From positions 62,001 to 126,000 of the IMG/VR virus record IMGVR_UViG_3300025121_000282: a stretch of DNA of 64,000 bases, one strand, 5' to 3'. Below are positions 24,647 through 41,972 of this stretch, in pieces. The notes under the pieces are model-generated. The model was given only the letters and a program-made list of their open reading frames with translations, did not search any database and had not been told where the DNA came from. The translations under genes and the position numbers were made by a program. Numbering within the stretch: position 1 is the first letter of the stretch; each line of letters opens with the position of its first letter.

Positions 24647-24968
24647 TGCCCGGTGAGGGAGTCGGACCCTCACGCTCTTGCGAGCGGCGGATTTTCTTCG
24701 CTCTACGAATTTCTTCGCTCTCCATTTTACTGGAGATTTGTGCGCTGGACTTTGTCTTCACCCGTTCTGGGTGGTCGCCGTTAAGTCTCTACACCTTCCT
24801 CCTTGTCAGGGAGGCTTGGCTCGGCGTTGTCTCGCTTCTTTTGAAGGAAGCAGGGAGTTCACCGAATTTGACGACATTCACTCTAGCCATTCCTGGCTAG
24901 GTGCTCAAATTGGATGTAGTCTCCATCCTACTTAAGTCCGCTGCGTCTACCGGTTTCGCCAACCGGGC
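24647..24968 (-). tRNA. trnL: tRNA-Leu(UAA), interrupted by group I intron
   Basis: Exons 24934-24968 and 24647-24695 join into a class II cloverleaf, anticodon loop CU-UAA-AA; no encoded CCA. Confidence 0.93.
24696..24933 (-). ncRNA. group I intron (IC3-like), 238 nt, in tRNA-Leu(UAA) after U34
   Basis: P/Q/R/S-like blocks AAATTCGGTGAA, CCGAGCCAAG, GAAGGTGTAGAGACT, AAAGTCCA; 5' exon ends in U, intron ends in G. Confidence 0.93.
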
Positions 24969-25063
24969 ACAATTTCAATGGTCATCACCTCGTAGGATTA
25001 TTCATTCTATACATCACGTGGTTAATCGCTGTTTGAGGTATAGAATTGAAAAGAAACCCGCAG

Positions 25064-25282
25064 TCAGTCACTTGTCAACCGACTGCGGGGGTGGAGGTGT
25101 TTTGCTCGTTGGAGCCAACTCCCTGCCGTTTGTTTGACCCTCGTCTTAGGGTCAATAACTGTGTGGGGTTCAGACTGGCAGCGCTTTTCAGTGCCCTTTG
25201 CCATAGCTTCTAAAATTGCTTGGCGCTGGACCGGGTCGGCTAGCATTTCCTTGATTTTAATATGCTTCTCTTCGTTTGTCAT
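25064..25282 (-). CDS. hypothetical protein
   Basis: ATG at 25282 overlaps the upstream TGA. Confidence 0.45.
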   Translation of the reverse strand: MTNEEKHIKIKEMLADPVQRQAILEAMAKGTEKRCQSEPHTVIDPKTRVKQTAGSWLQRAKHLHPRSRLTSD

Positions 25283-25794
25283 TTCCGCCTCACCCATACT
25301 TTTCGCTCTGGGAGGTTGAAAACAGGCTCTGGTGCCCCCACACTGAGGTGATTTTTGGTCAACCAACCACAAACGTGATCACGGTGCTGTTTCAAAGCCT
25401 TCCTTAGAAAAGCCTTTCTGCAGCCTTTCCACGGTTTGGCACTCTCCAGCGCTCGTTGAAACGATACAAACACACCATCGTCCTCGTCGTAAATGGCGTG
25501 TCCAGCTAGAGGTTCGTCTGCCCAGTACCAGCTGTTTACAACCACCCACTCATCCAGGTTCTCAGGCGGAATAGCAATGGTGTCGGTGGGCTCGTATTCC
25601 CCACCAATAGCGAACCATCTGGACTTTTCCTTTGGATTATTTTTATTGGACAGGATAAGCACTATCTCGTGCACGTTTACAGGTGTGACGAAAGACCAGT
25701 GGTTCCATGCACTGAAAACTGCATACACCTCTTGCCCTAAAGTGACAAAGGGGCCTGTGAAAAAAGGGTTTATATCAATACCATGGTACTTCAT
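25279..25794 (-). CDS. hypothetical protein
   Basis: 171 aa ORF. Confidence 0.6.
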   Translation of the reverse strand: MKYHGIDINPFFTGPFVTLGQEVYAVFSAWNHWSFVTPVNVHEIVLILSNKNNPKEKSRWFAIGGEYEPTDTIAIPPENLDEWVVVNSWYWADEPLAGHAIYDEDDGVFVSFQRALESAKPWKGCRKAFLRKALKQHRDHVCGWLTKNHLSVGAPEPVFNLPERKVWVRRK

Positions 25795-25822
25795 GCAGTA
25801 CTTCTATTATAACCCATCTGTG

Positions 25823-26212
25823 TTAATAACCCATCCCGCCACACTCTGGGCAGGCTGGTATCTTTTCGTTTGGCCCTATTCCACTTCCACCGCAGGACAC
25901 ACACCCCGGACAAGTTAGAGCCTTTAGAATCCAGTCCTCTGGCAATCCAAGCCTGATGGATGCTCTGTGTATGTCAAAATCTCCATGGACGATGTTGGAA
26001 TCTAGATGAAGCATAGAGTCCACAATAGACTTAGCCTCTTCTACAATTTTTATAGACTCGTGTGTCTTAGGTAGGCTAGGGTCATTAATCTGACGCAGTA
26101 ATAATTGGGACCTGAAAATCTGATATGCCGTAGGTCGATCACCAACACAGGATCTTAATGACCTTAATTCTTTTAGTCTATTTTCTAAGTCTATTGTGGG
26201 CATTGCAAACAA
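25823..26212 (-). CDS. hypothetical protein with C-terminal CxxCxGxG Zn finger
   Basis: CVSCGGSG and CPECGGMG motifs. Confidence 0.55.
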   Translation of the reverse strand: MFAMPTIDLENRLKELRSLRSCVGDRPTAYQIFRSQLLLRQINDPSLPKTHESIKIVEEAKSIVDSMLHLDSNIVHGDFDIHRASIRLGLPEDWILKALTCPGCVSCGGSGIGPNEKIPACPECGGMGY

Positions 26213-26247
26213 CCTCTGTGTGGGAGGCTGTCAATCAAAGAACTATT

Positions 26248-26784
26248 TCAGGTCCAAGTTTCCGTACAGTACCAGCAACTCGTGTCGATAGCCTCTGACG
26301 CTTTGGCGGCCCACTCTTTGAGTGTCATCGTCAGTATCTCGTCTGGTATGATTTTGTACCGATCGTCAAAAGCCATGTCCCGGGCGACCATGAATAATGG
26401 CTCGATTTGAGCCCAAGGATTGGACAACGAATAACTCTTGTATTTCAATTCTGGATCTGGGTCTGTTTGGATGGCCTGTATTAATTCTGCAAATGTATAG
26501 GTTCTTATTTCATCGGAACCAGATAAACTAGACCAATGCTCGCTTTTGTCTAGTATGAATTCAATAGACTCGCACAGGCCCCCTAGTGTAGTGCTACAAT
26601 CAGTGCCGTATGCACCTTCAATGCGGTCTTCCCAATCCGGCTCGTCAGTTATTGGTGTGACGAATTCGCCCCCGTAGGCGTAAGCACAGGAATTGGTAAC
26701 ATAAGGTAAAATCCAGTCGATGTAGACCTGTTTTAGCTCCCTGTCCTTGACTCTTACCCACCCTATGCCTCCGTCTGCGCCCAT
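26248..26784 (-). CDS. hypothetical protein
   Basis: 178 aa ORF. Confidence 0.6.
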   Translation of the reverse strand: MGADGGIGWVRVKDRELKQVYIDWILPYVTNSCAYAYGGEFVTPITDEPDWEDRIEGAYGTDCSTTLGGLCESIEFILDKSEHWSSLSGSDEIRTYTFAELIQAIQTDPDPELKYKSYSLSNPWAQIEPLFMVARDMAFDDRYKIIPDEILTMTLKEWAAKASEAIDTSCWYCTETWT

Positions 26785-26975
26785 GACTCACTCTCAGCCT
26801 GTTTGTGTGTTACAAATGCTTCGGAGTACGGTTCTATTCCGAGTTTGTACATGCCCTTCAAAAATGTGTAGTGGCCGGTGTATACCCTGTTCTCTACAAA
26901 CTTTTCTCCGTAGTGTGAACATAAGTCTTTGTAAAGCTCTATGTCCTCAGCAATGGCATCTATGATAGAACCCAT
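26763..26975 (-). CDS. hypothetical protein
   Basis: 70 aa ORF. Confidence 0.5.
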   Translation of the reverse strand: MGSIIDAIAEDIELYKDLCSHYGEKFVENRVYTGHYTFLKGMYKLGIEPYSEAFVTHKQAESESWAQTEA

Positions 26976-28374: not shown

Positions 28375-28449
28375 TGGTGACCCTAACGGGATTTGAACCC
28401 GTGTTCCCGGCTTGAAAGGCCAGTTTCCTAACCGCTGGAAGATAGGGCC
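28375..28449 (-). tRNA. trnE: tRNA-Glu(UUC)
   Basis: Cloverleaf, loop CU-UUC-AA, T-loop UUCAAAU, encoded CCA. Confidence 0.93.
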
Positions 28450-28454
28450 AAAAC

Positions 28455-28544
28455 TGGCGGAGAGGGTGGGAATCGAACCCACGGTAGATTTTACTCTACG
28501 ACGGTTTTCAAGACCGCAGCCTTAGGCCGCTCAGCCACCTCTCC
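28455..28544 (-). tRNA. trnS: tRNA-Ser(UGA)
   Basis: Class II cloverleaf, loop CU-UGA-AA, long variable arm, G73, encoded CCA. Confidence 0.93.
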
Positions 28545-28550
28545 ATTGTT

Positions 28551-28766
28551 TTATACTCTGAATTTAGACATGACCTCGGGTGTTACACCTTCGGCTAGTC
28601 TCTTGTCTAACTCAGGCAAACCAGTTAACAATCTGTTTGTTTTACCAGTACCAGAGCAGGCTCTACATCTACCAGTGACAACAACAGGTTTGCCATCATT
28701 GTCATCGTCAAGTGCAGAACACTCTCCAGTACCTTTACAGCAGGAACACTCTACAAGTTTTGGCAT
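28551..28766 (-). CDS. small DnaJ-type Zn-finger protein
   Basis: CSCCKGTG and CRACSGTG motifs. Confidence 0.6.
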   Translation of the reverse strand: MPKLVECSCCKGTGECSALDDDNDGKPVVVTGRCRACSGTGKTNRLLTGLPELDKRLAEGVTPEVMSKFRV

Positions 28767-28769
28767 GGC

Positions 28770-29039
28770 CTAATACCCAAGGACTAATAGGTCCCGGCGT
28801 CGTGTCTCTTTGTCTGTCTCGGACTCCGGATACTTTGAAAGAATAGTGTGTAACACCATAACTATATTTCCACAGGCCCATGAGTACCGCACAGTTAGGT
28901 CGAGTAGGTTTCTGAGCAAAAGAAGTGGGTCGCCTAGTTCAGGATCGAATTTTTGACACAGCTTGCGGCCTTGTGGGTCCATAAATGTGTCAGATTTCAT
29001 GTCACCAATAAGGGCGATAAGGTCTTTTAGGTCTTGCAT
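28770..29039 (-). CDS. hypothetical protein
   Basis: 89 aa ORF. Confidence 0.55.
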   Translation of the reverse strand: MQDLKDLIALIGDMKSDTFMDPQGRKLCQKFDPELGDPLLLLRNLLDLTVRYSWACGNIVMVLHTILSKYPESETDKETRRRDLLVLGY

Positions 29040-29040
29040 G

Positions 29041-29688
29041 CTAGACCCCTTTGGTAAACAGAGTTTCTACTTTGTAAGACGGGAGAAATGGGTGGTCCTC
29101 ATGCCAGACAGTAATCAGTTGAACGGCGTGATATTTTAAGCTGTCAGAGAAATCACTGGTGCTGTAACCACACCTACTGTCTAGTGCCTTTTTGTATGCA
29201 TCCATGCTCATTTGATGTGTCATCACAACGGCTGTTTCCGTCTCTTCGGCAAGCTTCCTAGCTTTTTCGCAATCGTAGTTTGCACCACAGTCGATAGCAA
29301 TGATGCTAGGCCCGTCGTAAGCCTTGGCCAATGTCTCAATGTCTGCAGGGTTATCAGCCACTATCACATGGACTGCGTCAGATGGGAAGTCGGCCCTGAC
29401 TATCTCGTAAAATTTCGCTTCGTACGAATGTAACTGCCAAGTGTACATACTTTTATAATCTAGACAGTCGATTATACCAAGTTCTCGTCTTTTATCCTCA
29501 AACTTCGGATGGCCGCTGTGGATTGTGATGAGTTTGTTCATTACCTGTCTTGCAGGCATTTCCGTAAACAGCACCACCGACTGGCCGCAAACTATCTTTT
29601 TGTACAACTCGCTCAGTAAATAGCTGCTCCTGCCGTGGCCTGCGAACCCGGCAATTACAGTCACCATTCCGTTGAGTAAAAGCATCAA
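29041..29688 (-). CDS. degenerate DnaB-C/RecA-like P-loop protein
   Basis: GMVTVIAGFAGHGRSS (Walker A K to R), LFTEMPARQV, IIAID. Confidence 0.5.
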   Translation of the reverse strand: MMLLLNGMVTVIAGFAGHGRSSYLLSELYKKIVCGQSVVLFTEMPARQVMNKLITIHSGHPKFEDKRRELGIIDCLDYKSMYTWQLHSYEAKFYEIVRADFPSDAVHVIVADNPADIETLAKAYDGPSIIAIDCGANYDCEKARKLAEETETAVVMTHQMSMDAYKKALDSRCGYSTSDFSDSLKYHAVQLITVWHEDHPFLPSYKVETLFTKGV

Positions 29689-29918
29689 ATTAGTCCTTTA
29701 TGGTGCATCGTTTCGGCAAGTGTGTACGCACAAATTTCACTATTGACACAGGCAATTCTAAGATTCGTACCTATATAAACATCGCCTACAATCGGTAGAT
29801 TGTCAAATAACACACCATCAGGACAGACTACCCTTGTCTCACTTATGATAGCGAATCGCCACGGTAGGTTGTTCTGCTCTTCGGCAGTTAGTATAAGTAC
29901 AGCCTCCAACTTGGGCAA
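29685..29918 (-). CDS. hypothetical protein
   Basis: 77 aa ORF, TTG start uncertain. Confidence 0.4.
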   Translation of the reverse strand: MPKLEAVLILTAEEQNNLPWRFAIISETRVVCPDGVLFDNLPIVGDVYIGTNLRIACVNSEICAYTLAETMHHKGLI

Positions 29919-30168
29919 GGTGGTCAGGCTTTGTGGTGTCTAACACTATGTCTGTTTTCAATTAGTACCTCAAAAGAAATGGTTGCATTGTGCCTGAGGG
30001 CTTTCGAGGCCCACGCTGACCTGTTACGTTTGGCTGTTCAGAGCATACCAGTATTGCAATTATACACAAGGCGGGTTAATCTGTACTCCAAGTTTGAATG
30101 GCCATTGTTGCAGAGTACTGTAGGCAGCCCTAACACTAATTCTTTTATGTTACTTCGTACACAAGAAT

Positions 30169-31590
30169 TTGAAAGCAAGAAGCACTATTCCCGAATCTTC
30201 AACTAATCCTGGCAAACTCCAGGCACTCAGTAATCTGTATCAGGAATATTTGAAGTACATGGAAGTTTGTGTGGGGTTGATGATTAAAGACAAGGTATTT
30301 AGTCTAAAGCCCTCAGAAAGAATGTTGTACTTTCCAAATTCCAGCACATTGACTGTGAATATAAAAGCCAGTTGTCAAATGCAGTCAATACAACTGGTTA
30401 ACAGTTGGGTAGCTGGTGTTTATGTTAGAATTTTAAGGAAGTATATCGGAAAGCAAAAATTTATTGATTCAGAAGCTAAACAACTTTATACGATCGGAAA
30501 ATATCGTCTTACTCATGGTGGTAAATTTGGAAATGCTGAGGTTTCCCAAAAATTAGTTGACCTTTATTGGTCTTGGGTTTGGAATCCCGAAATTGTGGGC
30601 AATCCTCCAAGAATCACTTACAAAATCCCAATGAGGATGACAGAGCACACGGTTGTTGTTGAACCACCAAAAAACACCGTTCATTTTAATGGTTTGTGGT
30701 TAAAGTTTTCTTCCCTGGTTTCAAAACAGCGGATTTCAATTCCCCTCAAAGTCACACCACACCTCCATCGGTTTGTTGGTTTGGCAAACATTGCTCTTAC
30801 AGTTTATGTCAGAAAGACGCGCATTGGGTGGCAGTTTCTCTTTACTGACAAATCTGAGGAACCCACTTTTGATGGTTCAGTGGGTAAGGTTGGAATAGAC
30901 GTTGGTTTAAATACTTTAGCTGCTACCAGCAGTGGAGAACTACATGGGTATAAATTTAAAAAGAAATTTGAGTATTTAAAAAAGAGGGTACAAGACGCAA
31001 GAGCAAATCGCCAAAGACAGGGTTTAAAGGATGACTCTTTAAAACTTTGGAAACTAGAACAACGCTTAAGTGGTCAGATCAAAACGGCTGTTGGTTCCAT
31101 TGCTAATAAACTTGTCAAGAAATATAAAGACCACACATTTGTCGTTGAAGATCTTGACCTCTCAGGATGTAAGGGTTCAAAGCGTTTTGCCTACAAAGCT
31201 CTTCAAAGCTCTTTAGCCCGAAAGGCTGTGATCGAGAAAATAAATCCGGCCTACACTTCTCAACAATGTCCAAGTTGCGGGTGCATTGATAAAAATAACA
31301 GAAACGGGATAAAATTTTCTTGTAAATCATGTGGTCGAAAAGCTCATGCCGATTTTGTTGGCGGGTTCAATATTCTCAGACGTTCTGAGAATAAAAATAT
31401 TGGGCTGAAAACGTCACCAAAAGAAGCAAAGGTAATTTTGAGAGAGCGATACCTTAGAAATAGGAACAGTTCCTCAAAACTCCCTGGTCGTAAGACCAAA
31501 ATAAAGCGCGCTTGTACGGACAAGCCAGAGACTCACTACGGAGAAATGCCGCAAAGTCTCAAATCAGGCTCAACTGAAAAGTTAACCTGA
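30169..31590 (+). mobile_element. tnpB: TnpB (IS200/IS605/IS607-family RNA-guided nuclease), no transposase in window
   Basis: RuvC-I GIDVG, RuvC-II VEDL, NPAYTSQQCPSCG...CKSCG, RuvC-III HAD; antisense to neighbours. Confidence 0.88.
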
Positions 31591-34027: not shown

Positions 34028-34030
34028 TAC

Positions 34031-34996: not shown

Positions 34997-35183
34997 TTGT
35001 TGCAGGCAGGGTTGGGCTTATTCAGGGGTACCCGGTTAAAGGCAGAGCCGAGAAGTTTGCTTGACCTACTACGCCCAGGGGCCGTGTGCTTGTCACCCTG
35101 GCGTCAATGTTCCAGAACCAACTCACAGCAAGCACATGTGACACGGCGCTAGTGCTGACCCACAAATTGGTCCTCTGCAACAA
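34997..35183 (-). ncRNA. candidate structured RNA (~185 nt rod)
   Basis: Terminal ttgttgcag/ctgcaacaa stem, nested internal complementarities, ORF-free gap. Confidence 0.35.
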
Positions 35184-35187
35184 AATC

Positions 35188-35415: not shown

Positions 35416-35421
35416 ATAGAG

Positions 35422-35763
35422 TTACTCCTTGGCAGAAACAAAATTGACCATCACATTGTTGTTCTGAATGCCAAACACAATGCCCTCCATAAACTTGTTG
35501 TAATCGGTATTGTGGAGCATCATAAACGTACCTATGTTAGTGTGTACCAGAATCCCATCGGTCTTGTCTCTAACAGCGCCCAAGAAATCGGCGACAACAG
35601 TCTGCTTCCGACTGTCAGGTCCCTTACTCATTGTCTCAAATTGAATTAGCACTTTGACTACTGCCTCGTTATTGGGTGTGGTACATGGGCTGTAACTACC
35701 GTAGCAGTCAGCGGCGCTACTCCACTCTGACGACGGGTCACTCTGGCACCCATCGTCAGACAA
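35422..35763 (-). CDS. hypothetical protein
   Basis: 113 aa ORF. Confidence 0.5.
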   Translation of the reverse strand: MSDDGCQSDPSSEWSSAADCYGSYSPCTTPNNEAVVKVLIQFETMSKGPDSRKQTVVADFLGAVRDKTDGILVHTNIGTFMMLHNTDYNKFMEGIVFGIQNNNVMVNFVSAKE

Positions 35764-35854
35764 TCCGTGTTACGGTACCCACACCATAATCCGTGTCGTA
35801 TTACTGCGGGTCAACTACTGCGGAAGGTCTGAAGCCTGATTAACCACAATGCCG

Positions 35855-36346
35855 TCAGGCAGAGGAAAAGTAGTCACTGTAATCTTTTTCCTCAAAGTAC
35901 TGAGGTTCTGCCTTTTTGGTCAGAGGATTCAACATGAGAACCCAGGTGGCGTCAGCGGACGCAGGGCTGAACAACCCATTGGGGTCAGCCTGAGGCAGAA
36001 TGGCATACCCCTGGTTTAAGTTTTCTGCCGCAATCTTCTCAGGGTTCGTGAACTGGGTTGCAGCAGGGATACCAAATCCCAAAGACTTGCCAACCAGGAT
36101 GAACTTGCCGAGCATGGGACTGAAAACATAGGTATATGTAGTCAGCCCTTCCTGGTCCCGGAGTTCAAAAAGGGTCTTGACGATTTTCCGCTCACGGAAA
36201 TTTTTGATCCCAGGCATACCCACCTGGGATGTGCCTTCGGAGAGGATCTTTTCTTGCTGCTGTCTCTGACGGACGTCACTTGAAACCTCTTCACGAGGAC
36301 AACCAACAAGAGAAAGGCCTGCAGACAAAATCAGAAAACGCTTCAT
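35855..36346 (-). CDS. phage lipoprotein; possible frameshift near the C-terminus
   Basis: Lipobox LSLVGC; an alternate frame after the A5 run reads KITVTTFPLP. Confidence 0.65.
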   Translation of the reverse strand: MKRFLILSAGLSLVGCPREEVSSDVRQRQQQEKILSEGTSQVGMPGIKNFRERKIVKTLFELRDQEGLTTYTYVFSPMLGKFILVGKSLGFGIPAATQFTNPEKIAAENLNQGYAILPQADPNGLFSPASADATWVLMLNPLTKKAEPQYFEEKDYSDYFSSA

Positions 36347-36360
36347 GGGCTACTATTCCC

Positions 36361-36663
36361 TTAGTTACGAAGATTGAGGACAAAAGAGGCTAGATCGGGG
36401 GGCATGGCATCATGGGGAACAGTGTCCGCACGACGAATCATTTCTGAACGGAGAAGAGCCTTGTGGTCAGGGTCGGCAGAAGACGCATATGACATCTGCA
36501 TGTTCCTGATTTCTGATATAACCCCGTCCTGGAAAGCTTGAGAGTTCTTGAACACCTCTCTCCGGGTGTCTTCTTCTGCAGCCCCGAAGAGCTTAAAGGA
36601 CACCAGACCCAGGCCTCTTGCCCCAAAGGCAAGGAGGGCCAGTACGAGTAACGCAACTACCAC
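36361..36663 (-). CDS. membrane-anchored protein upstream of the lipoprotein
   Basis: N-terminal TM; RREVFKNSQAFQDG. Confidence 0.6.
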   Translation of the reverse strand: MVVALLVLALLAFGARGLGLVSFKLFGAAEEDTRREVFKNSQAFQDGVISEIRNMQMSYASSADPDHKALLRSEMIRRADTVPHDAMPPDLASFVLNLRN

Positions 36664-36715
36664 AACTATGAGCCAGTTGTAGGCCTCTTTGCGGTCTTCT
36701 CGTCACTGCTCAGTA

Positions 36716-37156
36716 TTAGACATTTTGCAGTTCGCTTTCTACAGTTTTAACCGACCACTTTTGCACACGTATTGTAATCCCAAATGGTGATTGGGTGATT
36801 TCACTTTTTGCGTTTATGTGTAATTCTTTCAGCGACTTGTTGATGGCATGAACAAGTACTTCGAATGGCCCAAGCCTTATGTTTTCCAGTTGAAGTTTAC
36901 TAATAAATGTAGTAGTCTCTTCCACTTCCTTTACAGGGAATTCGTGAAACTTGACCCCTCCAATAATTACAGCACCATCCACCTGAGTTGCAGAATTCCA
37001 GCTTGTAATCCTGGTTTCTACCTCTGGAATACTTTCCAGTCGTAGACGTATTTTGACATTGCTGATGCCAAGTGCATTCCACGGTGGGAACAACGTGAGT
37101 GTGGTCCCTGCCAGCGTGCCGACACTCTCATTACCTATGTATACTTCTGCATTCAT
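36716..37156 (-). CDS. hypothetical protein
   Basis: 146 aa ORF. Confidence 0.55.
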   Translation of the reverse strand: MNAEVYIGNESVGTLAGTTLTLFPPWNALGISNVKIRLRLESIPEVETRITSWNSATQVDGAVIIGGVKFHEFPVKEVEETTTFISKLQLENIRLGPFEVLVHAINKSLKELHINAKSEITQSPFGITIRVQKWSVKTVESELQNV

Positions 37157-37170
37157 TGCAGTACTCCCAA

Positions 37171-37455
37171 TTAGTCTATGTGTTTTGGCAATGACGGAAT
37201 TATATCTGACAATCTGAATATAGTAGGGTCAGACAAGTGTAGGTTTGCCCGATTCCAGTCTTCCAATTCATTTAGCTTGCGTATGCCTAACTCAGTAGGA
37301 CGATAAGAGCCGCTAATTCTGTTTTTGTGGACCAGTCCTGCCAAGCACAGTTGGTGGGCCACACCCTGGTAATACAACCCCCACACAGGAGCAGTATGGA
37401 CAATATGACGAAGTACCTGATGGTAGTACCTATAGTGTTTTATTTCGCGTTTCAA
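37171..37455 (-). CDS. small winged-helix-like protein (paralog of 35188-35415)
   Basis: QLCLAGLVHKNRISGSYRPTELG. Confidence 0.55.
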   Translation of the reverse strand: MKREIKHYRYYHQVLRHIVHTAPVWGLYYQGVAHQLCLAGLVHKNRISGSYRPTELGIRKLNELEDWNRANLHLSDPTIFRLSDIIPSLPKHID

Positions 37456-37662
37456 TTAGATGCCCCCAAATAGTAGCATTGGACTATGTGCTGGGCACCT
37501 GTCCGCATTTACCAAGTCTCCGAATATGTTATGCTCACAGAAGCATAGGGGTGTGCAACAGGTTGGATTGTGACATGGCTCAGGTTTGCCATCCTCTTTA
37601 ATTAAAAGAGGGAGACTACAAATTAGACATCTGGGCATGCTGCCTCGATTGTAATAAGCCAT
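37456..37662 (-). CDS. small Cys-rich protein
   Basis: CLIC, CHNPTCC and CFCEH motifs. Confidence 0.4.
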   Translation of the reverse strand: MAYYNRGSMPRCLICSLPLLIKEDGKPEPCHNPTCCTPLCFCEHNIFGDLVNADRCPAHSPMLLFGGI

Positions 37663-37686
37663 TGAAAGAAACCACCTGGAGAAAAA

Positions 37687-37769
37687 TGGAGCCGGGTGTG
37701 GGATTCGAACCCACGGTGTGGGATTCCGCCTTACAAGGGCGGTGCCGTCGACCGCTTGGCTAACCCGGC
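37687..37769 (-). tRNA. trnT: tRNA-Thr(UGU) with expanded variable region
   Basis: G1-C72/C2-G71, loop CU-UGU-AA, U73, CCA; 11-nt variable region. Confidence 0.85.
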
Positions 37770-37794
37770 AGAAACACAATTGTACATGGCAATT

Positions 37795-37965
37795 GGAAAT
37801 GCTGATTTTGAAGGCCCCAGGACTTCCACCTGGACACCACTTTTGATCGTGGCTGCTAGCGCAGACTCTAGAATCTGCGGCCAGTGTTGGGCACCGCTTA
37901 ATGACCACTTGGCGGGGCACAGAGCACCGGTCTTACAATAGGCCTTCAAAATCAGCACTTCTCCA
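37795..37965 (-). ncRNA. candidate multibranch ncRNA (~170 nt)
   Basis: 16-bp perfect stem 37801-37816/37941-37956 enclosing several hairpins. Confidence 0.5.
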
Positions 37966-37998
37966 GTGCCCAGGCGTTACAAAGTGTCCGTACTTTCC

Positions 37999-38519
37999 GG
38001 ACTGTCACCCCTTCCTCAAGCAAGCTGCCTTGTAGGTGCATACTTGAGAATTTGGTCAGGCCCAGAGTTGGAACCTGTGACTCAAACAGCTAGCTAGGCC
38101 GTTAAAGTCAAGTACCCAATGGCGAAGCACATGCCATCAGGAGGGTGTGGAACCTGCTGTGCTAACAGGGCAGAGAACCGGGTCTGCGGACCGGTTCACA
38201 ATAGCCACTCATTTGAGCCTTAGGCTTTCGCCACGTAGTCCTGCCGGAAAGTCTCATGGGAAATGGCATCCCACTTTTCATCGTAGGTTGAAGTCCACGG
38301 CTTTGTCTTCCGATGCACCTTTTAGTGCTGAGGGCGGGTGACTCCCTTTCGGTCGTAAAAACCGAATCTTGCCAACACCAACATGGTTATTGCAACCCGC
38401 CCGAACACCCCATGCGGGGCTCAAATGCAGGGTGCTCTGCTATCAACCACTAAGCAGATTCCTGTGAGCGGAGTAGGCCTTTTAGTTGCCTAGTCCCGGC
38501 TTTTATACGGGACAGTCCC
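37999..38519 (-). ncRNA. candidate large structured ncRNA (~520 nt)
   Basis: Terminal gggactgtc/gacagtccc pairing, about ten short internal hairpins, no credible ORF. Confidence 0.5.
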
Positions 38520-38527
38520 TAGGGGAA

Positions 38528-38992
38528 CTAAACCTTTGCAGTTCTGGCGCGCTTGAAACCTAGCAGGCTGATTTGATTGATCCTGGCCTTGTAAAGCACG
38601 CCACCACTCTCGCCACGAGCTTCCAGGAAAGCAATACCGGTGGCGACACTTTCAATCAGGGCATCCAATTCTATGTTCGATAAATGATCAGCCCGGTCAA
38701 ACCTTTCCCAGGCTTTTTTGACGCTTTGATTGCTGATCATCTGCTTGGGGTTGGACACCTCAGCACGAATCAAATCATTGGTTTCCATAGTTCTTGTGTC
38801 ATTGCAATGTGAGAAGGCGTCTATTCGCTCCCTCAAGATCTCGCTGTACGCAGTCATATGGGTTATTTGGAGTACAATCCGCGCCCGTTCGTGTTCCTTG
38901 AGTTTGGAGAATATTTCATCGTTGATGAGAAAGGACAACTTGGCGATCCTTTTGTCTAGTTGTTCCTTCTCGTCCAAAATCTTCTCTATCAT
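38528..38992 (-). CDS. crAss001_48-like N-terminal domain fused to a repeated phage domain
   Basis: EKEQLDKRIAKL...QITHMTAYSEILRERI; C-terminal half similar to 40361-40582. Confidence 0.6.
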   Translation of the reverse strand: MIEKILDEKEQLDKRIAKLSFLINDEIFSKLKEHERARIVLQITHMTAYSEILRERIDAFSHCNDTRTMETNDLIRAEVSNPKQMISNQSVKKAWERFDRADHLSNIELDALIESVATGIAFLEARGESGGVLYKARINQISLLGFKRARTAKV

Positions 38993-39037
38993 CTGGGACT
39001 CCGTGGATATAAAAACCTAGACCTCAGGGGGCTGTAT

Positions 39038-39295
39038 TCAGACCTTCTCCATAGGCTCTACACCCCATCTACACTCCCCGTTCCCACTTTTTGATCTCAG
39101 TGAGAGTGTGGAAACCAACACCGGCTTGTCTTTCAGTGCGGCCAACTTGACTGCATGCTGAAAGCGAGCCATGAAGGGGGTGCTGTCATCCACCAGTTCC
39201 ACCTCAAACCCTGCGGCCTTTAAAGCCTCATTGATAATCAGGGCTATGGTGGTTTTACCCTCACCGGCCTCGCCTGAAATCTGTACCTTAAGCAT
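39038..39295 (-). CDS. small P-loop-containing protein
   Basis: ISGEAGEGKTT. Confidence 0.55.
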   Translation of the reverse strand: MLKVQISGEAGEGKTTIALIINEALKAAGFEVELVDDSTPFMARFQHAVKLAALKDKPVLVSTLSLRSKSGNGECRWGVEPMEKV

Positions 39296-39536
39296 CTGGA
39301 ACTCTTTCGAAAAACGATGGTTAGTGGGCTGAACTAGGAGACATCAACAGCCCCGTAGGAAGCACTCCTCAGTTTTAAAAAGGCGCGTTACGACAAGTTG
39401 GCACTCCAAGATGCGTACGCATTTGAAAACTAACCTGTCTTCCCTTTTGAAAAAGCACACCAGGAGGGACTCGAATAGAGTGGTAATCTTTTTACAGTTC
39501 ACTCTATTCAACCCCTATCAGCTTGTGGACCTGGAA

Positions 39537-40062
39537 ATGAAACTCACTAATTGTACTAACTGTGGTGACTCCACCACAAATCCAAGATTTTGTTCTAACT
39601 CGTGTTCGGCATCATGGGGCAACAAACTAAAGCCCCCATGTCCCAATGAAGAAGAAATGTAAACGTTGTGAAGTTATTATTCCCAGCAGAATAACTTATT
39701 GCACCAAATGTCAAGACCACTTTAAATCAAATACTAAGCGATGGAAAAACGAAACACTGGGTACACTACAGGCACGCCGAGTGTATCAGTCCAACTCACA
39801 AATTCGAGATGATGCTCGTGTGGTAGTGGACAAGCAGGGGTGGGTCAAATGCTGTGCGGTGTGTGAGTACTCTTTACACGTGCAAGTGTGTCACGTTAAA
39901 GCCATCAAAGACCACACGCCAGACACTATTATCTCGGCGATAAATGACCCATCCAACCTGATTTTGTTGTGTTCCAACCACCACTGGGAATTTGACCATG
40001 GCCTCTTGGACATTAAAGAAATTCGTGCTAGGCAGGGATCGAACCTGCGACCACTCGCTTAG
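39537..40062 (+). pseudogene. HNH endonuclease with N-terminal Zn finger, frameshifted at a C5 run (~39633)
   Basis: MKLTNCTNCG...FCSNSCS in one frame, then KKKCKRC...HVQVCH...NLILLCSNHHWEFD; 3' end overlaps tRNA-Arg. Confidence 0.75.
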
Positions 40063-40311
40063 CTTACCACTATAACTTTCGTTACTCTCTTGTGGAGATT
40101 TGTGGCCTGGACTTTGTCTTCACCCGTTCTGGGTGGCCCCCGTCAAGTCTCTACACCTTTTCCCGTTTAATAGGGAACTTGGCTCGGCGTTGTCTCGCTT
40201 CTTTTGAAGGAAGCAGGGAGTTCACCGAATTTGAGGGCATTCACACTAGACATTCCTATCTAGGTGCTCCTATTTCAAAGGCGAGCGCTCTATCCGCTGA
40301 GCTACTAGCAC
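40024..40311 (-). tRNA. trnR: tRNA-Arg(UCU), interrupted by group I intron
   Basis: Exons 40278-40311 and 40024-40062 give loop CU-UCU-AA; A20, G73; no CCA. Confidence 0.9.
40063..40277 (-). ncRNA. group I intron (IC3-like), 215 nt, in tRNA-Arg(UCU) after U34
   Basis: Same P/Q/R/S blocks as the Leu intron; terminal G; covarying P3. Confidence 0.9.
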
Positions 40312-40360
40312 ACAAAATCAATTTGAAAATAGTTACTAGGGAACAAAAGAAAGTTGAGTG

Positions 40361-40582
40361 TTACTCAAGTGGGTTTGGACGGATGGGTCCATCAGGGTCA
40401 TCATTAGTCCATCTAATTCTAGTCCTAAGGGCCTTTAGGTCTAATAAGGTCCTTTGGTCGGATTCGGCCTTATACAAAACACCACCCGTCTCACCCCGCG
40501 CTGATAGGAAAGTAACACCAGAATTGATACTGTCGATCAACTGATTGAGTTCAATGTCAGACAGGTCACCCCCCATGGTCAT
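40361..40582 (-). CDS. hypothetical protein (paralog of the 38528-38992 C-terminal domain)
   Basis: LSDIELNQLIDSINSGVTFLSARGETGGVLYKA. Confidence 0.6.
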   Translation of the reverse strand: MTMGGDLSDIELNQLIDSINSGVTFLSARGETGGVLYKAESDQRTLLDLKALRTRIRWTNDDPDGPIRPNPLE

Positions 40583-40772
40583 ACCTCAGCCATAACTGGT
40601 CTAATTCTGGTGTGGTTTCCATTCTCTGCTCCAAGAATTGAAAAATGGGCTACAAGTGAGTTGACGGTGATGTGACTATCGACCATCGAGCCGCGGCCTT
40701 ACCACAAGTAGGCCACACCGTGGGGACCGGGAGGCTTATACCTGCTTGTAACCCAAACTTTGATGAAAATTG

Positions 40773-40846
40773 TAGCCGCTGAGGGACTCGGACCCCCGAC
40801 ATCCTCCGTGTAGGGGAGGCACTCTAACCAACTGAGTTAAGCGGCC
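40773..40846 (-). tRNA. trnV: tRNA-Val(UAC), atypical C33
   Basis: Cloverleaf, loop CC-UAC-AC, T-loop UCCGAGU, A73, no CCA. Confidence 0.85.
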
Positions 40847-40853
40847 ACAGAAA

Positions 40854-41507
40854 CTATGTTTGAAGAATCTTGTCCCAACGCTCTGCTGCGTCTGGGGAAA
40901 TGGTTATTGCGTTCTTATACAAAGATGTTTCTTGCCAAGACCAAATATAACATGTGTCTGTGTACAAATCGTATGCAATAATAAAATCGAATTCATGGGA
41001 TTGGTATCTTTTACCCGGTTGTATCAGCTTGGTTTTGGCTAGAACTCTTGGGGCATGGATCAATCTAATAGCTGGCTGACCATGTCCCTTGTCTGACCTA
41101 GCAGTTTTAACTTGTACTTTCCATAGCTTATTAGTTTGGGGTAGGAACATTATTATGTCCACAGTGGCACAATCAAACACTGACTTGTATGTCTCAATAC
41201 CTCTAGCCAAAGCCCGCGCCATAACTGCACACTCTGACAAGCTTCCAATGTCACGACTAGTTAATTTAGCTCGGTCGATCGATTGGTGGAGCCAAGATTC
41301 CGTCCCACGTTCTTTTTTATTGCTGATTGTATGTGGGATGTGTTTGCTTTTTATCTCAGTTTCAGTGAGTGGGTGGTCTCTCAATAGTGCACTAAGTGCT
41401 CCCTTGGAAACCCCAGTCAGGCCCCTAATCTCATTAAGGGACCTACGTTCATCAGTCCTAAGACGCAGGCACTCGGCTCTAAGACTCTCATCTAAACGTG
41501 TAGCCAT
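40854..41507 (-). CDS. free-standing PD-(D/E)XK endonuclease (I-Ssp6803I/PDDEXK_5-like) with N-terminal HTH
   Basis: GSLSECAVMARAL...VDII...KVQVKT; N-terminal RSLNEIRGLTGVSKGALSALL. Confidence 0.75.
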   Translation of the reverse strand: MATRLDESLRAECLRLRTDERRSLNEIRGLTGVSKGALSALLRDHPLTETEIKSKHIPHTISNKKERGTESWLHQSIDRAKLTSRDIGSLSECAVMARALARGIETYKSVFDCATVDIIMFLPQTNKLWKVQVKTARSDKGHGQPAIRLIHAPRVLAKTKLIQPGKRYQSHEFDFIIAYDLYTDTCYIWSWQETSLYKNAITISPDAAERWDKILQT

Positions 41508-41521
41508 GTGAACCCTCGTAG

Positions 41522-41563
41522 TAGTTCACATGAACTATAACACAAGTATTGACACTTGCACAA
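41522..41563 (-). promoter_or_regulatory. putative sigma70-like promoter with overlapping palindromic operator
   Basis: TTGTGC-18 bp-TATAGT with TGn extension; TAGTTCA-CA-TGAACTA palindrome at 41522-41537. Confidence 0.35.
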
Positions 41564-41669
41564 TTAAGTATCCCTATTGGGTTGTCAAAGACACCATTTT
41601 GCGTTTGAGCTTAATAAGACCGCTAGTGAGGCCCTTGAAAATCAGTGTGTAAGAGTGTAGGAACAGTCG

Positions 41670-41972
41670 TGCGCCCACCTGGACTTGAACCAGGAACCGT
41701 GGCGTTATGCAATCCACTTCGGCTTTCGCCGCTCTTCCGTTGCTGAAAGATTTGTGGTCTGGACTATCCCTTAACCGTGTTCCTTTATCGGAATTTAGGT
41801 TCTCCGTGTCTAGTCTCTACACCTTCCCTTTGCTTAAAGGGCTTGGCTCGGGATTGGCATCAGCATAACCTGTTAAGCGTTCCCCGAATTTACGGAGTTG
41901 TCACGCAAAAGTTTCCTTTTGCGCAGCCCTTAAACTCAAGCACCCCGCTCTGACCATTTGAGCTATGGGCGC
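41670..41972 (-). tRNA. tRNA(CAU), elongator Met or Ile2, interrupted by group I intron
   Basis: Exons 41939-41972 and 41670-41709; loop CU-CAU-AA; G1-C72 paired; no initiator GGG/CCC. Confidence 0.88.
41710..41938 (-). ncRNA. group I intron (IC3-like), 229 nt, after U33 of tRNA(CAU)
   Basis: AAATTCGGGGAA, CCCGAGCCAAG, GAAGGTGTAGAGACT, GATAGTCCA; P3 CTCCGT/ACGGAG; terminal G. Confidence 0.9.

What the first reader, a model, noticed from the sequence alone, without database searches (positions are those of the whole stretch)
24647..41972. Phage tRNA cluster with three anticodon-loop group I introns and homing endonucleases outside them
Seen: tRNA-Leu(UAA), tRNA-Arg(UCU) and tRNA(CAU) each carry a 215-238 nt ORF-less intron with IC3-type P/Q/R/S blocks, a 5' exon ending in U and a terminal G. 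Two of the three have a free-standing homing-type endonuclease immediately adjacent. Known: bacterial tRNA group I introns are classically single events in cellular genomes (cyanobacterial Leu-UAA and fMet, Agrobacterium Arg-CCU, Azoarcus Ile-CAU), and well-studied phage introns mostly sit in DNA-metabolism genes. Inference: this phage runs an intron-gated tRNA supply. The precursors have no anticodon loop until they self-splice, which could shield them from host anticodon nucleases, while adjacent nucleases spread the alleles.
Basis: partly seen in the sequence, partly recalled or inferred. Interest (0 to 1): 0.9.

Follow-up and report, generated by a model that had tools for sequence, protein, structure and literature searches.

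The report
Self-splicing introns in phage tRNA genes
Three transfer-RNA genes of a very large groundwater phage are each interrupted by a small self-splicing group I intron and flanked by mobile nuclease genes, which looks like selfish DNA colonising phage tRNA clusters; my survey suggests this is common in phages but goes unannotated.

Summary
tRNA-Leu(UAA), tRNA-Arg(UCU) and a tRNA(CAU) on the minus strand each carry an ORF-less group I intron of 238, 215 and 229 nt in the anticodon loop. Each has U-1, a terminal G and an IC3-type core. Rfam scores are 35-45 bits, below the gathering score of 50, with E-values of 3e-8 to 3e-5. Each intron forms 41-43 of the 43 consensus pairs of a 42-intron alignment.

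The contig is a phage of at least 315 kb (rIIA/rIIB genes, IMG/VR entry).

An HNH_2 gene overlaps the Arg 3' exon in antisense. An I-Ssp6803I-like PD-(D/E)XK gene follows tRNA(CAU). Relatives of both nucleases sit in other phage tRNA clusters. The trio of tRNA-Arg(UCU), intron and HNH_2 recurs in three IMG/VR contigs. The Arg module replaced most of an older intron-less tRNA-Arg, whose 3' stub remains. The Leu and Arg introns are recent paralogs (88% identical core).

The arrangement is not rare. At least 62 IMG/VR loci carry such split tRNAs, as does cultured Klebsiella phage Muenster, where it is unannotated.

The best reading is selfish introns plus free-standing homing endonucleases. Shielding from anticodon nucleases has no support.

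The parts
24934..24968 (-). tRNA-Leu(UAA) 5' exon, ends CUU (U34)
24696..24933 (-). Group I (IC3-type) intron, 238 nt, inserted between U34 and A35 (setting Leu.3Ug). It has an extended P1 hairpin, GNRA loops on P2 and P9a, and a terminal G.
   Evidence: Rfam 45.1 bits; 42 of 43 consensus pairs
24647..24695 (-). tRNA-Leu(UAA) 3' exon; no encoded CCA
40278..40311 (-). tRNA-Arg(UCU) 5' exon, ends CUU (U34)
40063..40277 (-). Group I (IC3-type) intron, 215 nt, inserted between U34 and C35 (Arg-UCU.3Ug). The guide sequence UAG-GAG can pair with CUU of the 5' exon (P1) and CUA of the 3' exon (P10). It is a paralog of the Leu intron.
   Evidence: Rfam 35.0 bits; 43 of 43 consensus pairs; 83% identity over 211 nt and 88% over 178 nt to the Leu intron
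40024..40062 (-). tRNA-Arg(UCU) 3' exon, wholly overlapped in antisense by the end of the HNH ORF
39646..40062 (+). Free-standing HNH_2 endonuclease gene (138 aa) with an N-terminal Cys4 finger. It converges on tRNA-Arg. Its TAG stop is the complement of CUA at the start of the exon.
   Evidence: Pfam PF13391 E 5.6e-10; PHROG HNH hits; homologs beside tRNA genes in other phage contigs
39450..39475 (-). Stub of the 3' end (T loop to acceptor strand) of an older, different tRNA-Arg(UCU) gene. Its intact, intron-less form is in relative L186.
   Evidence: 17 of 17 exact; the adjoining 55 nt downstream, 39453-39399, are 100% identical to L186
40361..40582 (-). 73-aa ORF of unknown function inside the roughly 1.16-kb segment (about 40632-39476) that is absent from relative L186
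41939..41972 (-). tRNA(CAU) 5' exon, ends CU (U33)
41710..41938 (-). Group I (IC3-type) intron, 229 nt, inserted between U33 and C34 (setting 2Ug, the site of the classical cyanobacterial tRNA-fMet intron)
   Evidence: Rfam 40.9 bits; 41 of 43 consensus pairs
41670..41709 (-). tRNA(CAU) 3' exon. G1-C72 is paired, so this is not an initiator. C4-G69 and C5-G68 suggest tRNA-Ile2 (an inference from memory).
40854..41507 (-). Free-standing PD-(D/E)XK endonuclease gene (217 aa) of the I-Ssp6803I family with an N-terminal HTH-like region. It lies 162 nt downstream of tRNA(CAU) and 7 nt upstream of tRNA-Val.
   Evidence: Pfam PF11645 37 bits, cut-off 26.1; family profile hits PDB 2ost at E 1.1e-9; PF11645 is the ssp6803i family (PMC3424549)
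41645..41664 (.). Arm of a 20-nt inverted repeat that brackets the whole split tRNA(CAU) gene. The partner arm is 41977-41996. A similar repeat, judged by eye, brackets the gene at the corresponding position in L186.
41977..41996 (.). Second arm of the inverted repeat around tRNA(CAU)
28375..40846 (-). Six uninterrupted tRNA genes of the same cluster: Glu-UUC 28375-28449, Ser-UGA 28455-28544, Arg-CCU 32350-32426, Gln-UUG 32987-33063, Thr-UGU 37687-37769, Val-UAC 40772-40846

Best explanation
The window comes from a groundwater phage of at least 315 kb. Its tRNA cluster has been colonised by selfish elements of two kinds: compact, ORF-less IC3 group I introns, and free-standing homing-type endonuclease genes.

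RNA level (inferred from structure, not assayed). The three precursors must self-splice by the usual two transesterifications, started by guanosine, to give tRNA-Leu(UAA), tRNA-Arg(UCU) and tRNA(CAU). These tRNAs read codons that the phage uses heavily.

DNA level (inferred). The introns have no nuclease of their own and depend on neighbouring nucleases, an arrangement known as collaborative homing. The endonuclease cuts intron-less tRNA alleles of co-infecting relatives. Repair then copies the nuclease gene together with the adjacent intron-bearing tRNA. The intron splits the recognition site, which protects the carrier genome.

Shown by comparison:
- The module of intron-bearing tRNA-Arg plus HNH replaced most of an earlier intron-less tRNA-Arg gene.
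- The same trio recurs in other phages.
- The Leu and Arg introns are recent copies of one another. One intron has therefore moved between two different tRNA genes that share C32-U33-U34, keeping the GAG part of its guide sequence and changing the part that can pair with the 3' exon.
For: Anatomy and splice sites.

Ribozyme core:
- Rfam full-length matches, E 3e-8 to 3e-5.
- RNAalifold on 42 related introns recovers P2, P3, P4, P5, P6, P8 and P9. 33 of 43 pairs show compensatory changes.
- The window introns form 42, 43 and 41 of the 43 pairs.
- The Leu and Arg paralogs differ by compensatory changes in P2, P3, P6 and P9a.

Phage origin:
- RIIA at E 4e-95 and RIIB at E 5e-63.
- dCMP deaminase, RNase H and Sir2 PHROGs.
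- Identical proteins on IMG/VR contig 3300025121_000282 of 314,886 bp, and on contigs of up to 341 kb.

Nucleases:
- Family assignments.
- All four found relatives of the PD-(D/E)XK protein lie in the same groundwater dataset or in other metagenomes, and every one I placed on a contig sits in a tRNA cluster.
- HNH_2 relatives lie in tRNA clusters, one converging on a tRNA-Arg gene.
- The only three HNH_2 ORFs flanking IMG/VR split tRNAs all lie 48-49 nt downstream of intron-bearing tRNA-Arg(UCU) genes. They are 33-40% identical to the window's HNH, and the tRNA exons are 84-86% identical.

Replacement scar.

Paralogy of the Leu and Arg introns.

Codon demand: AGA is 27% of Arg codons, AUA 32% of Ile, UUA plus UUG 36% of Leu.
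Against: - Splicing and endonuclease activity are inferred, not measured.
- Rfam scores are below the curated gathering score.
- No exact intron-less allele of any of the three tRNAs was found. The intron-less tRNA-Arg in L186 has different exons (about 63% identity, my count from the alignment). Homing into an empty site is therefore not directly seen.
- The stub points to illegitimate or T-loop-mediated recombination rather than clean gene conversion.
- Relatives of both nucleases also sit beside uninterrupted tRNAs, so nuclease and intron need not depend on each other.
- No nuclease gene was recognised beside the Leu intron.
- My control for nuclease enrichment compared distant ORFs, not ORFs beside uninterrupted phage tRNAs.
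Confidence: 0.75

Rival explanations
1. One reading: adaptive gating. The phage keeps these tRNAs as intron-bearing precursors that lack an anticodon loop, so that host anticodon nucleases cannot cut them, and splicing releases usable tRNA.
For: The introns sit exactly at positions 33/34 or 34/35, where several anticodon nucleases cut (my own knowledge). Another phage that carries a relative of the PD-(D/E)XK nuclease encodes RtcB and RtcA RNA-repair enzymes next to its tRNA cluster, which shows that tRNA damage matters to such phages. The three tRNAs serve heavily used codons.
Against: Only spliced tRNA is functional, and it has an ordinary loop, so any protection ends at the moment of use. 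Self-splicing is probably fast and unregulated. The insertion sites follow ribozyme rules: every '3Ug' intron in the survey uses CUU at positions 32-34 paired to GAG. The same intron family is common in bacteria, which have no such need. The association with mobile nucleases and the replacement scar point to selfish spread. Six tRNAs of the same cluster have no intron.
Confidence: 0.07
2. Passive capture. The phage picked up intron-bearing tRNA genes whole from a bacterial host. The introns are immobile passengers and the adjacent nucleases are unrelated residents of the tRNA cluster.
For: IC3 introns at Leu-UAA, Arg-CCU, Leu-CAA and Lys-UUU are widespread in Proteobacteria, Bacteroidota and Chloroflexi (Williams 2020). 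Free-standing nucleases are common in phage tRNA clusters whether or not introns are present.
Against: The Leu and Arg introns are each other's closest relatives by far (83-88% against at most 73% to anything else). That points to duplication within the phage lineage rather than two separate captures. No Arg(UCU) setting appeared in the bacterial sample, while six appeared in viral contigs. The trio of tRNA-Arg(UCU), intron and HNH_2 is conserved across divergent phage contigs.
Confidence: 0.13
3. Dead genes. The interrupted tRNAs are pseudogenes and the introns are decaying relics that no longer splice.
For: Rfam scores are below gathering. P10 for the CAU intron is weak (by eye). tRNA(CAU) has a G27-A43 mismatch.
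Against: 41-43 of 43 consensus pairs are intact. The paralogs differ by compensatory rather than disruptive changes. U-1, the terminal G, the S element AGUCCAG and the GNRA loops are all kept. The exons fold into canonical cloverleaves. The Leu locus is kept in a strain variant whose 1,844-nt aligned stretch is 97.6% identical. Williams 2020 treated Rfam scores from 18-20 bits as valid for bacterial tRNA introns, because the Rfam seed holds no bacterial sequences.
Confidence: 0.04
4. The contig is cellular or a plasmid rather than a phage.
For: The window holds a PAS histidine kinase with a response regulator, a TnpB gene and an HTH antitoxin-like gene, and no structural genes. There is no nucleotide match to GenBank phages.
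Against: An rIIA/rIIB pair and many PHROG matches. The contig is listed in IMG/VR as a 315-kb viral genome. It shows dense, short, co-oriented genes with scattered tRNAs. There is no match to plasmids.
Confidence: 0.03

Closest known systems
[quoted passage not shown]
   Same: Same insertion site (CUU/AAAA), same IC3 core, no ORF, similar size, P1 formed with CUU.
   Different: Carried by a phage tRNA gene. It has an extra hairpin in P1. Its closest relative is not a Leu intron but the Arg(UCU) intron 15 kb away in the same genome.
Synechocystis PCC 6803 tRNA-fMet intron with its internal homing endonuclease I-Ssp6803I (PDB 2ost; Bonocora & Shub 2001; Zhao et al. 2007, cited in PMC3424549 and PMC3984707)
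   Same: An intron in a CAU-anticodon tRNA at the same position (after U33, '2Ug'). The nuclease is of the same PD-(D/E)XK family.
   Different: The nuclease gene lies outside the intron, 162 nt downstream of the tRNA. It carries an extra N-terminal HTH-like region of about 80 residues. The tRNA is not an initiator. Its four found relatives sit beside various uninterrupted tRNAs.
Azoarcus tRNA-Ile(CAU) and Agrobacterium tRNA-Arg(CCU) IC3 introns (5Ug settings)
   Same: Compact IC3 ribozymes of about 200 nt with GNRA loops on P2 and P9, and closely similar Q and R sequences. Bacterial Arg-CCU introns are among the nearest non-phage relatives (70% identity).
   Different: They are inserted after position 36, not 33 or 34. 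They are cellular, and no associated nuclease is known to me.
Collaborative homing of an ORF-less intron with a free-standing endonuclease (cyanophage S-PM2 psbA intron with F-CphI; T3/phiI-type phages). Recalled from memory, not retrieved here.
   Same: An ORF-less group I intron next to a free-standing nuclease gene in a phage. The proposed logic is that the intron breaks the nuclease's target site.
   Different: The host genes here are tRNAs, not protein genes. Target specificity is untested. The module includes the whole small host gene.
Phage T4 SegB, a free-standing homing endonuclease in the T4 tRNA gene cluster (mentioned in PMC13096335; its homing role is from memory)
   Same: A free-standing endonuclease gene embedded in a phage tRNA cluster that promotes inheritance of neighbouring tRNA genes.
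   Different: SegB is a GIY-YIG enzyme, and the T4 tRNA genes have no introns.
'Enigmatic' tRNA introns of Lak megaphages and other jumbo phages (Devoto et al. preprint 10.1101/356790; PMC13037316)
   Same: Introns in tRNA genes of very large phages.
   Different: Those introns were not classified; they were tested against Rfam, are called 'enigmatic', and some are said to encode another tRNA. The introns here are clear group I ribozymes.

Membership tests
Group I intron, IC3-type of bacterial tRNA anticodon loops | Conserved paired core (P3-P8 with the P4-P6 domain) matching the family model | tested here: met
   RF00028 full-length matches at E 3e-8 to 3e-5. 41-43 of the 43 consensus pairs of a 42-intron alignment are formed, and 33 of those pairs are supported by compensatory changes.
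Group I intron, IC3-type of bacterial tRNA anticodon loops | Score at or above Rfam's curated gathering threshold (50 bits) | tested here: not met
   45.1, 40.9 and 35.0 bits. The Rfam seed has no bacterial sequences, and 18-20 bits was used as a working cut-off for tRNA introns by Williams 2020. I therefore treat this as a limit of the model, not of the sequences.
Group I intron, IC3-type of bacterial tRNA anticodon loops | 5' exon ends in U that can form a U-G wobble in P1; the intron ends in G (omega G) | tested here: met
   Leu has CUU|AAG pairing with UUUGAG. Arg has CUU|U pairing with GGAG. CAU has GCU|U pairing with GGGC. All three end in G (pairing read by eye).
Group I intron, IC3-type of bacterial tRNA anticodon loops | P7 guanosine-binding helix (R element ..AGAGACU.. 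pairing with S element ..AGUCC..) | tested here: inconclusive
   Both sequence elements are present in all three. The S element was not part of my search pattern and is nearly invariant in 42 introns. P7 is a pseudoknot and was not modelled.
Group I intron, IC3-type of bacterial tRNA anticodon loops | Removal restores a canonical tRNA | tested here: met
   ARAGORN calls all three joined-exon sequences.
Group I intron, IC3-type of bacterial tRNA anticodon loops | Self-splicing with guanosine and Mg2+ | not testable with these tools
   Needs in vitro transcription and a splicing assay.
I-Ssp6803I-like PD-(D/E)XK homing endonucleases (Pfam PF11645) | Sequence membership of the family | tested here: met
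   PF11645 at 37 bits against a cut-off of 26.1. A profile of the five homologs hits chain 2ost_A at E 1.1e-9 over residues 3-106. PF11645 is the ssp6803i family with structure 2ost in PMC3424549.
I-Ssp6803I-like PD-(D/E)XK homing endonucleases (Pfam PF11645) | Catalytic PD-(D/E)XK residues | tested here: inconclusive
   E92, F111-D112, D117 and V133 are invariant in the five-sequence alignment. The Q and K that flank V133 in the window's VQVK stretch vary. These positions were not mapped onto the active site of the solved structure.
I-Ssp6803I-like PD-(D/E)XK homing endonucleases (Pfam PF11645) | Encoded inside the group I intron it mobilises | tested here: not met
   The gene is free-standing, downstream of the tRNA. 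The introns hold no ORF.
I-Ssp6803I-like PD-(D/E)XK homing endonucleases (Pfam PF11645) | Cleaves the intron-less tRNA(CAU) gene at the anticodon region | not testable with these tools
   Needs purified protein and DNA substrates.
Free-standing HNH homing endonuclease | HNH nuclease domain | tested here: met
   PF13391 at E 5.6e-10. A Cys-rich, His-rich stretch typical of HNH domains is visible in the translation.
Free-standing HNH homing endonuclease | Mobile-gene behaviour: patchy presence at a fixed kind of site in related genomes | tested here: met
   Absent from relative L186 at the same place. Homologs lie beside tRNA genes in other phage contigs, three of them beside intron-bearing tRNA-Arg(UCU).
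Collaborative homing (ORF-less intron plus neighbouring endonuclease) | The endonuclease target spans the intron insertion site of the intron-less allele | not testable with these tools
   No cleavage data. No exact intron-less allele was found.
Tailed huge phage | Phage hallmark genes on the contig | tested here: inconclusive
   rIIA/rIIB and several phage-type nucleotide-metabolism genes, and IMG/VR listing. Capsid, portal and terminase genes lie outside the window and were not examined.

The most novel reading that the evidence does not exclude
The introns are kept because they help the phage, not merely because they are selfish. In this reading, intron-bearing precursors form a pool of tRNA for the rare codons AGA, AUA and UUA that host anticodon nucleases, or nucleases that target tRNA genes, cannot attack. 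Self-splicing, which depends on GTP and Mg2+, would then meter the release of usable tRNA during infection. That would make this an RNA-level counter-defence built from a ribozyme.
Probability: 0.07. Interest if true: 0.85.

Novelty: new variant of a known kind. Interest (0 to 1): 0.55.

Why it matters
[quoted passage not shown] Later papers on huge phages mention only unclassified tRNA introns. I found no paper in the held library that describes group I introns in phage tRNA genes; that library omits most subscription journals.

This locus, and the survey it prompted, show four things.

- Classical IC3 ribozymes do live in phage tRNA genes, often in tRNA clusters, and also in cultured jumbo phages of Klebsiella and Escherichia, where the split tRNA is missing from the annotation I checked. 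Phage tRNA counts are therefore underestimates.
- One intron lineage can hop between different tRNA species that share C32-U33-U34.
- A tRNA gene, its intron and a nuclease can travel as one module.
- Relatives of I-Ssp6803I, the endonuclease encoded inside the cyanobacterial tRNA-fMet intron, exist as free-standing genes in phage tRNA clusters. This bears on how introns that encode their own endonuclease arise.

The cultured phages also offer a bench system for testing splicing and homing.

Tried and rejected
- Megablast of the region against GenBank phages and against plasmids: no match.
- Rfam at gathering threshold: no intron reported. The E-value mode was needed.
- Exact-junction searches for intron-less alleles of all three tRNAs in IMG/VR: none.
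- A scan of JGI metagenomes with the Leu 5' exon: only the same phage and a strain variant whose 1,844-nt aligned stretch is 97.6% identical, both with the intron.
- Relatives found through the 529-aa DUF8224 protein (L133, L134; 38-42% identity) have no tRNAs nearby, so they gave no synteny.
- The 166-aa ORF downstream of tRNA-Leu, and the ORFs upstream of it, have no Pfam or PHROG match even at lax thresholds. The 166-aa ORF has no relative in IMG/VR beyond the same contig. I could not show a third nuclease.
- A single-sequence search of the PD-(D/E)XK protein against PDB found nothing. A family profile was needed.
- My first splice-site refinement with ARAGORN alone was too permissive. I replaced it with filters for U33, a purine at 37, a 7-nt loop, the stem and the length.
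- The region upstream of the nuclease in relative L186 begins like the window's CAU 5' exon and then diverges for about 700 nt. I could not resolve it: Rfam finds no intron there and the alignment is uninformative.
- I did not run the pair-count tool with shuffled controls, because it would have needed a long typed structure string.
- The idea that the tRNA set reflects anticodon-nuclease targets was set aside in favour of the ribozyme's CUU/GAG requirement.

Full report
OBSERVATION

ARAGORN and Rfam at default settings see only six uninterrupted tRNA genes, all on the minus strand. With Rfam's E-value threshold, three full-length matches to the group I intron model appear at 24719-24944, 40099-40319 and 41743-41947. 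Scores are 45.1, 35.0 and 40.9 bits. E-values for the whole window are 3e-8, 3e-5 and 5e-7. Nothing else in the 64 kb matches.

Reading the flanks and joining them in silico gives three canonical tRNAs.
- Leu(UAA): exons 24968-24934 and 24695-24647, intron 238 nt.
- Arg(UCU): exons 40311-40278 and 40062-40024, intron 215 nt.
- tRNA(CAU): exons 41972-41939 and 41709-41670, intron 229 nt.

Each 5' exon ends in U and each intron ends in G. No sense-strand ORF lies in any intron. In the nomenclature of Williams 2020 the settings are Leu.3Ug, Arg(UCU).3Ug and CAU.2Ug. The first and third are the sites of the classical cyanobacterial Leu and fMet introns.

ARE THEY WORKING RIBOZYMES?

The Rfam scores are below the gathering score of 50. 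However, the Rfam seed holds no bacterial introns, and 18-20 bits was a usable cut-off for tRNA introns in 81,441 genomes.

I collected related introns from viral and bacterial collections and mapped their splice sites with a script. The script requires U-1, a terminal G, U33, a purine at 37 and a 7-nt loop.

RNAalifold on 42 of these introns recovers P2, P3, P4, P5, P6, P8 and P9. 33 of 43 pairs show compensatory changes. In P3, no sequence breaks a pair in any of the six columns. The window's introns form 42, 43 and 41 of the 43 pairs.

Read by eye in the sequences:
- P1 pairs CUU (Leu, Arg) or GCU (CAU) of the exon with GAG or GGC of the guide, with a U-G wobble at the splice site.
- In the Arg intron the guide UAG-GAG can align both exons (CUU and CUA).
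- L2 and L9a are GNRA tetraloops, as I recall for the compact Azoarcus-type IC3 ribozyme.
- The S element AGUCCAG was not part of my search pattern and is nearly invariant.

One caveat applies. The Q and R elements are invariant in the alignment by construction, because I selected on them.

THE LEU AND ARG INTRONS ARE RECENT PARALOGS

They are 83% identical over 211 aligned positions and 88% over the 178-nt core. The next-best relative of either is at most 73% identical. They differ in P1 and the P9 tail, and by compensatory changes in P2, P3, P6 and P9a. Both have therefore stayed under selection for structure since one intron lineage came to occupy two different tRNA genes.

All '3Ug' introns in the survey (Leu-UAA, Arg-UCU, Lys-UUU, Gln-UUG, Glu-UUC) sit after C32-U33-U34 and carry GAG in the guide. 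The set of invaded tRNAs thus follows from what P1 needs. This is an inference.

IS IT A PHAGE?

- The window has an rIIA/rIIB pair (E 4e-95 and 5e-63).
- It has phage-type dCMP deaminase, RNase H, Sir2 and other PHROG matches.
- Identical proteins lie on IMG/VR contig 3300025121_000282 (314,886 bp), on a 226-kb groundwater scaffold (PRJNA292723), and on contigs of up to 341 kb.
- The nearest cultured rIIA is only 30-34% identical.
- Structural genes lie outside the window and were not checked.
- The three tRNAs serve well-used codons: AGA is the commonest Arg codon (27%), AUA is 32% of Ile, and UUA plus UUG are 36% of Leu.
- tRNA(CAU) is not an initiator, because G1-C72 is paired. Its C4-G69 and C5-G68 pairs resemble tRNA-Ile2. 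That is a lead from memory, not a test.

THE NUCLEASES

ORF 39646-40062(+) is an HNH_2 protein. Its last 13 codons are the antisense of the whole Arg 3' exon, and its TAG stop is the complement of CUA at the start of that exon.

ORF 40854-41507(-) carries a PF11645 domain (37 bits against a cut-off of 26.1). PF11645 is the family of I-Ssp6803I, the homing endonuclease encoded inside the Synechocystis tRNA-fMet intron. A profile of the protein and its four relatives hits the solved structure 2ost at E 1.1e-9.

The three relatives whose contigs I examined (P0002-P0004) all lie inside tRNA clusters: one beside tRNA-Val, one within a cluster of 13 tRNAs and one within a cluster of 35.

HNH_2 relatives behave likewise. 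One converges on a tRNA-Arg(UCG) gene in a 19-tRNA cluster of a 227-kb contig. Another lies between tRNA-Asn and tRNA-Leu.

Among 89 ORFs within 400 nt of intron-split tRNAs in IMG/VR, the commonest Pfam families are all HNH families:

| Pfam family | ORFs |
|---|---|
| HNH | 6 |
| HNH_2 | 3 |
| HNH_3 | 3 |
| HNH_4 | 1 |
| HNH_5 | 1 |
| SegE GIY-YIG | 1 |
| GIY-YIG | 1 |
| DUF559 | 1 |
| NUMOD3 | 1 |

The counts may overlap within one protein. Among 89 ORFs 2-6 kb away in the same loci, no nuclease family of these types reached two members. That control does not separate 'beside an intron' from 'inside a tRNA cluster'.

The three HNH_2 ORFs in that set all lie 48-49 nt downstream of intron-bearing tRNA-Arg(UCU) genes (L083, L093, L097). 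They are 33-40% identical to the window's HNH. The tRNA exons are 84-86% identical and the introns 67-69%. The trio of tRNA-Arg(UCU), IC3 intron and HNH_2 is therefore an old, recurring module. In the window the nuclease gene is inverted relative to the others.

A REPLACEMENT SCAR

Relative L186 comes from the same groundwater project and has a PD-(D/E)XK protein 60% identical to the window's. Its gene order is nuclease, tRNA-Val, a 248-aa ORF, then an uninterrupted tRNA-Arg(UCU).

The window keeps only the last roughly 24 nt of that tRNA, at 39475-39450 (17 of 17 exact). The adjoining downstream 55 nt (39453-39399) are 100% identical to L186. The segment upstream of L186's tRNA matches window 40757-40633.

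The roughly 1.16 kb in between (about 40632-39476) holds a 73-aa ORF, the intron-bearing tRNA-Arg and the HNH gene. It has thus replaced the 5' two-thirds of an older, different tRNA-Arg gene (about 63% exon identity, my count from the alignment). The breakpoint at the T loop suggests recombination at that conserved sequence rather than clean gene conversion.

At the CAU position L186 has a weak, odd, uninterrupted tRNA-like gene with a CAU loop (31.5 bits). By eye it is bracketed by an inverted repeat similar to the one around the window's gene.

HOW COMMON IS THIS?

62-64 of these lie in split tRNAs:

| Setting | Loci |
|---|---|
| Leu-UAA.3Ug | about 40 |
| Arg-UCU.3Ug | 6 |
| Lys-UUU.3Ug | 3 |
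| CAU.5Ug | 3 |
| CAU.2Ug | 1 |
| Other settings | the rest |

- 40 of the 62 resolved loci have at least one other tRNA nearby, and 14 have five or more.
- Distant ORFs in the same loci include phage hallmark genes, and only one flanking ORF is an integrase.
- One 298-kb contig has two cores (L054, L084). A 543-kb contig has one (L110).
- In GenBank phages, the CAU intron core matches uncultured phage genomes of 595-735 kb. It also matches cultured jumbo phages: Escherichia virus TH47, phage Turkey5, and Klebsiella phages Muenster, KP13-7, RCIP0023 and phiKp_21. No feature is annotated under the match in any of these.
- In Muenster a 104-bit group I intron lies in an unannotated gap of the tRNA cluster, between HNH genes, inside a probable tRNA(CAU) split after U36.
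- The 735-kb phage LR756501 has a split tRNA-Leu(UAA). ARAGORN calls it, but the Rfam scan of that locus at E 0.001 or better listed no intron. Its intron forms 43 of the 43 consensus pairs, and its tail is nearly the same as that of the window's Arg intron.

No locus I fetched had three introns. The loci were short, however, and my pattern was strict.

LITERATURE

- A 2014 review states that all phage introns known then were in protein genes despite many phage tRNA genes.
- The Lak megaphage preprint reports 'enigmatic' tRNA introns as a first, and a 2026 jumbo-phage survey repeats this without classifying them.
- Williams 2020 lists 21 tRNA settings in bacteria. Its table is an image, so I could not check whether Arg(UCU).3Ug is among them.
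- I found no paper in the held library that describes group I introns in phage tRNA genes. The library is incomplete.

VERDICT

The most likely explanation is selfish IC3 introns together with free-standing homing-type nucleases colonising a huge phage's tRNA cluster, with module replacement and tRNA-to-tRNA intron transfer visible in the sequence.

My confidence by part:
- About 0.95 that these are real group I introns.
- About 0.85 that they splice.
- About 0.5-0.6 that the neighbouring nucleases drive their spread.

Noticed in passing
L120 2914-3224 (Klebsiella phage Muenster, MT708547 about 302826-303136): A cultured jumbo phage has a 231-nt group I intron (Rfam 104 bits) inside a probable tRNA(CAU), split after U36. 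It lies in a gap of the annotated tRNA cluster where nothing is annotated. Similar hits occur in Escherichia virus TH47, phage Turkey5, and Klebsiella phages KP13-7, RCIP0023 and phiKp_21.
   Followed up: partly
window 30169-31590 (+) and 31631-32113 (-): A TnpB-like gene (OrfB_IS605 plus a Cas12f-like TNB domain) sits in the middle of the tRNA cluster, next to a NADAR-domain gene.
   Followed up: no
window 49532-51064 (-) and about 51061-51498 (-): A PAS-domain histidine kinase with an adjacent response-regulator gene, which would make a two-component system encoded by a phage.
   Followed up: no
window 48447-48809 (+): A 120-aa GIY-YIG nuclease gene on the strand opposite to its neighbours, probably another free-standing mobile nuclease.
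   Followed up: no
window 8072-8812 (+), 12753-13781 (+), 31631-32113 (-): Sir2-like, ADP-ribosylglycohydrolase and NADAR genes in one window, which suggests an NAD/ADP-ribose counter-defence set.
   Followed up: no
window 41645-41664 and 41977-41996: A 20-nt inverted repeat (95% complementary) brackets the whole split tRNA(CAU) gene. By eye, a similar repeat brackets the gene at the corresponding position in relative L186. It may be a processing stem or a cassette boundary.
   Followed up: partly
L186 120-1000: In the relative, the stretch upstream of the nuclease starts like the window's CAU 5' exon (AGAGCGGGGTGCT is exact) and then runs about 700 nt of unrelated sequence with R-like and S-like motifs. 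It ends at an odd tRNA-like gene with a CAU loop and no clear D arm (Rfam 31.5 bits). Rfam finds no intron there. This is unexplained.
   Followed up: partly
L017, L019, L025, L045, L046, L070, L090, L113 (IMG/VR): Eight viral loci hold intron-split tRNAs with a UAA anticodon loop (CUUAAAA) but only 73-76 nt once spliced. They lack the long variable arm expected of tRNA-Leu, so their identity is unclear.
   Followed up: no
L191 1-3071 and 3754-8307: A metagenomic contig with 35 tRNA genes in 8 kb carries a relative of the PD-(D/E)XK nuclease inside the cluster. Next to the cluster are an intein-containing RtcB ligase and an RtcA cyclase, which together would form a tRNA repair set.
   Followed up: no
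L001-L119 (IMG/VR): 55-57 of the 119 IC3 core matches in viral contigs are not inside a split tRNA that my ARAGORN-based procedure could call or resolve. They may lie in protein genes, in tmRNA, in odd tRNAs or at contig ends.
   Followed up: no
window 37687-37769 (-): tRNA-Thr(UGU) is 83 nt long, with an insertion of about 8 nt in the variable region relative to the tRNA model.
   Followed up: no
window 42208-42504 (-): A 98-aa HTH_3 protein, best matched by a PHROG annotated as 'plasmid antitoxin with HTH domain' (E 4.5e-25), lies just upstream of tRNA(CAU).
   Followed up: no
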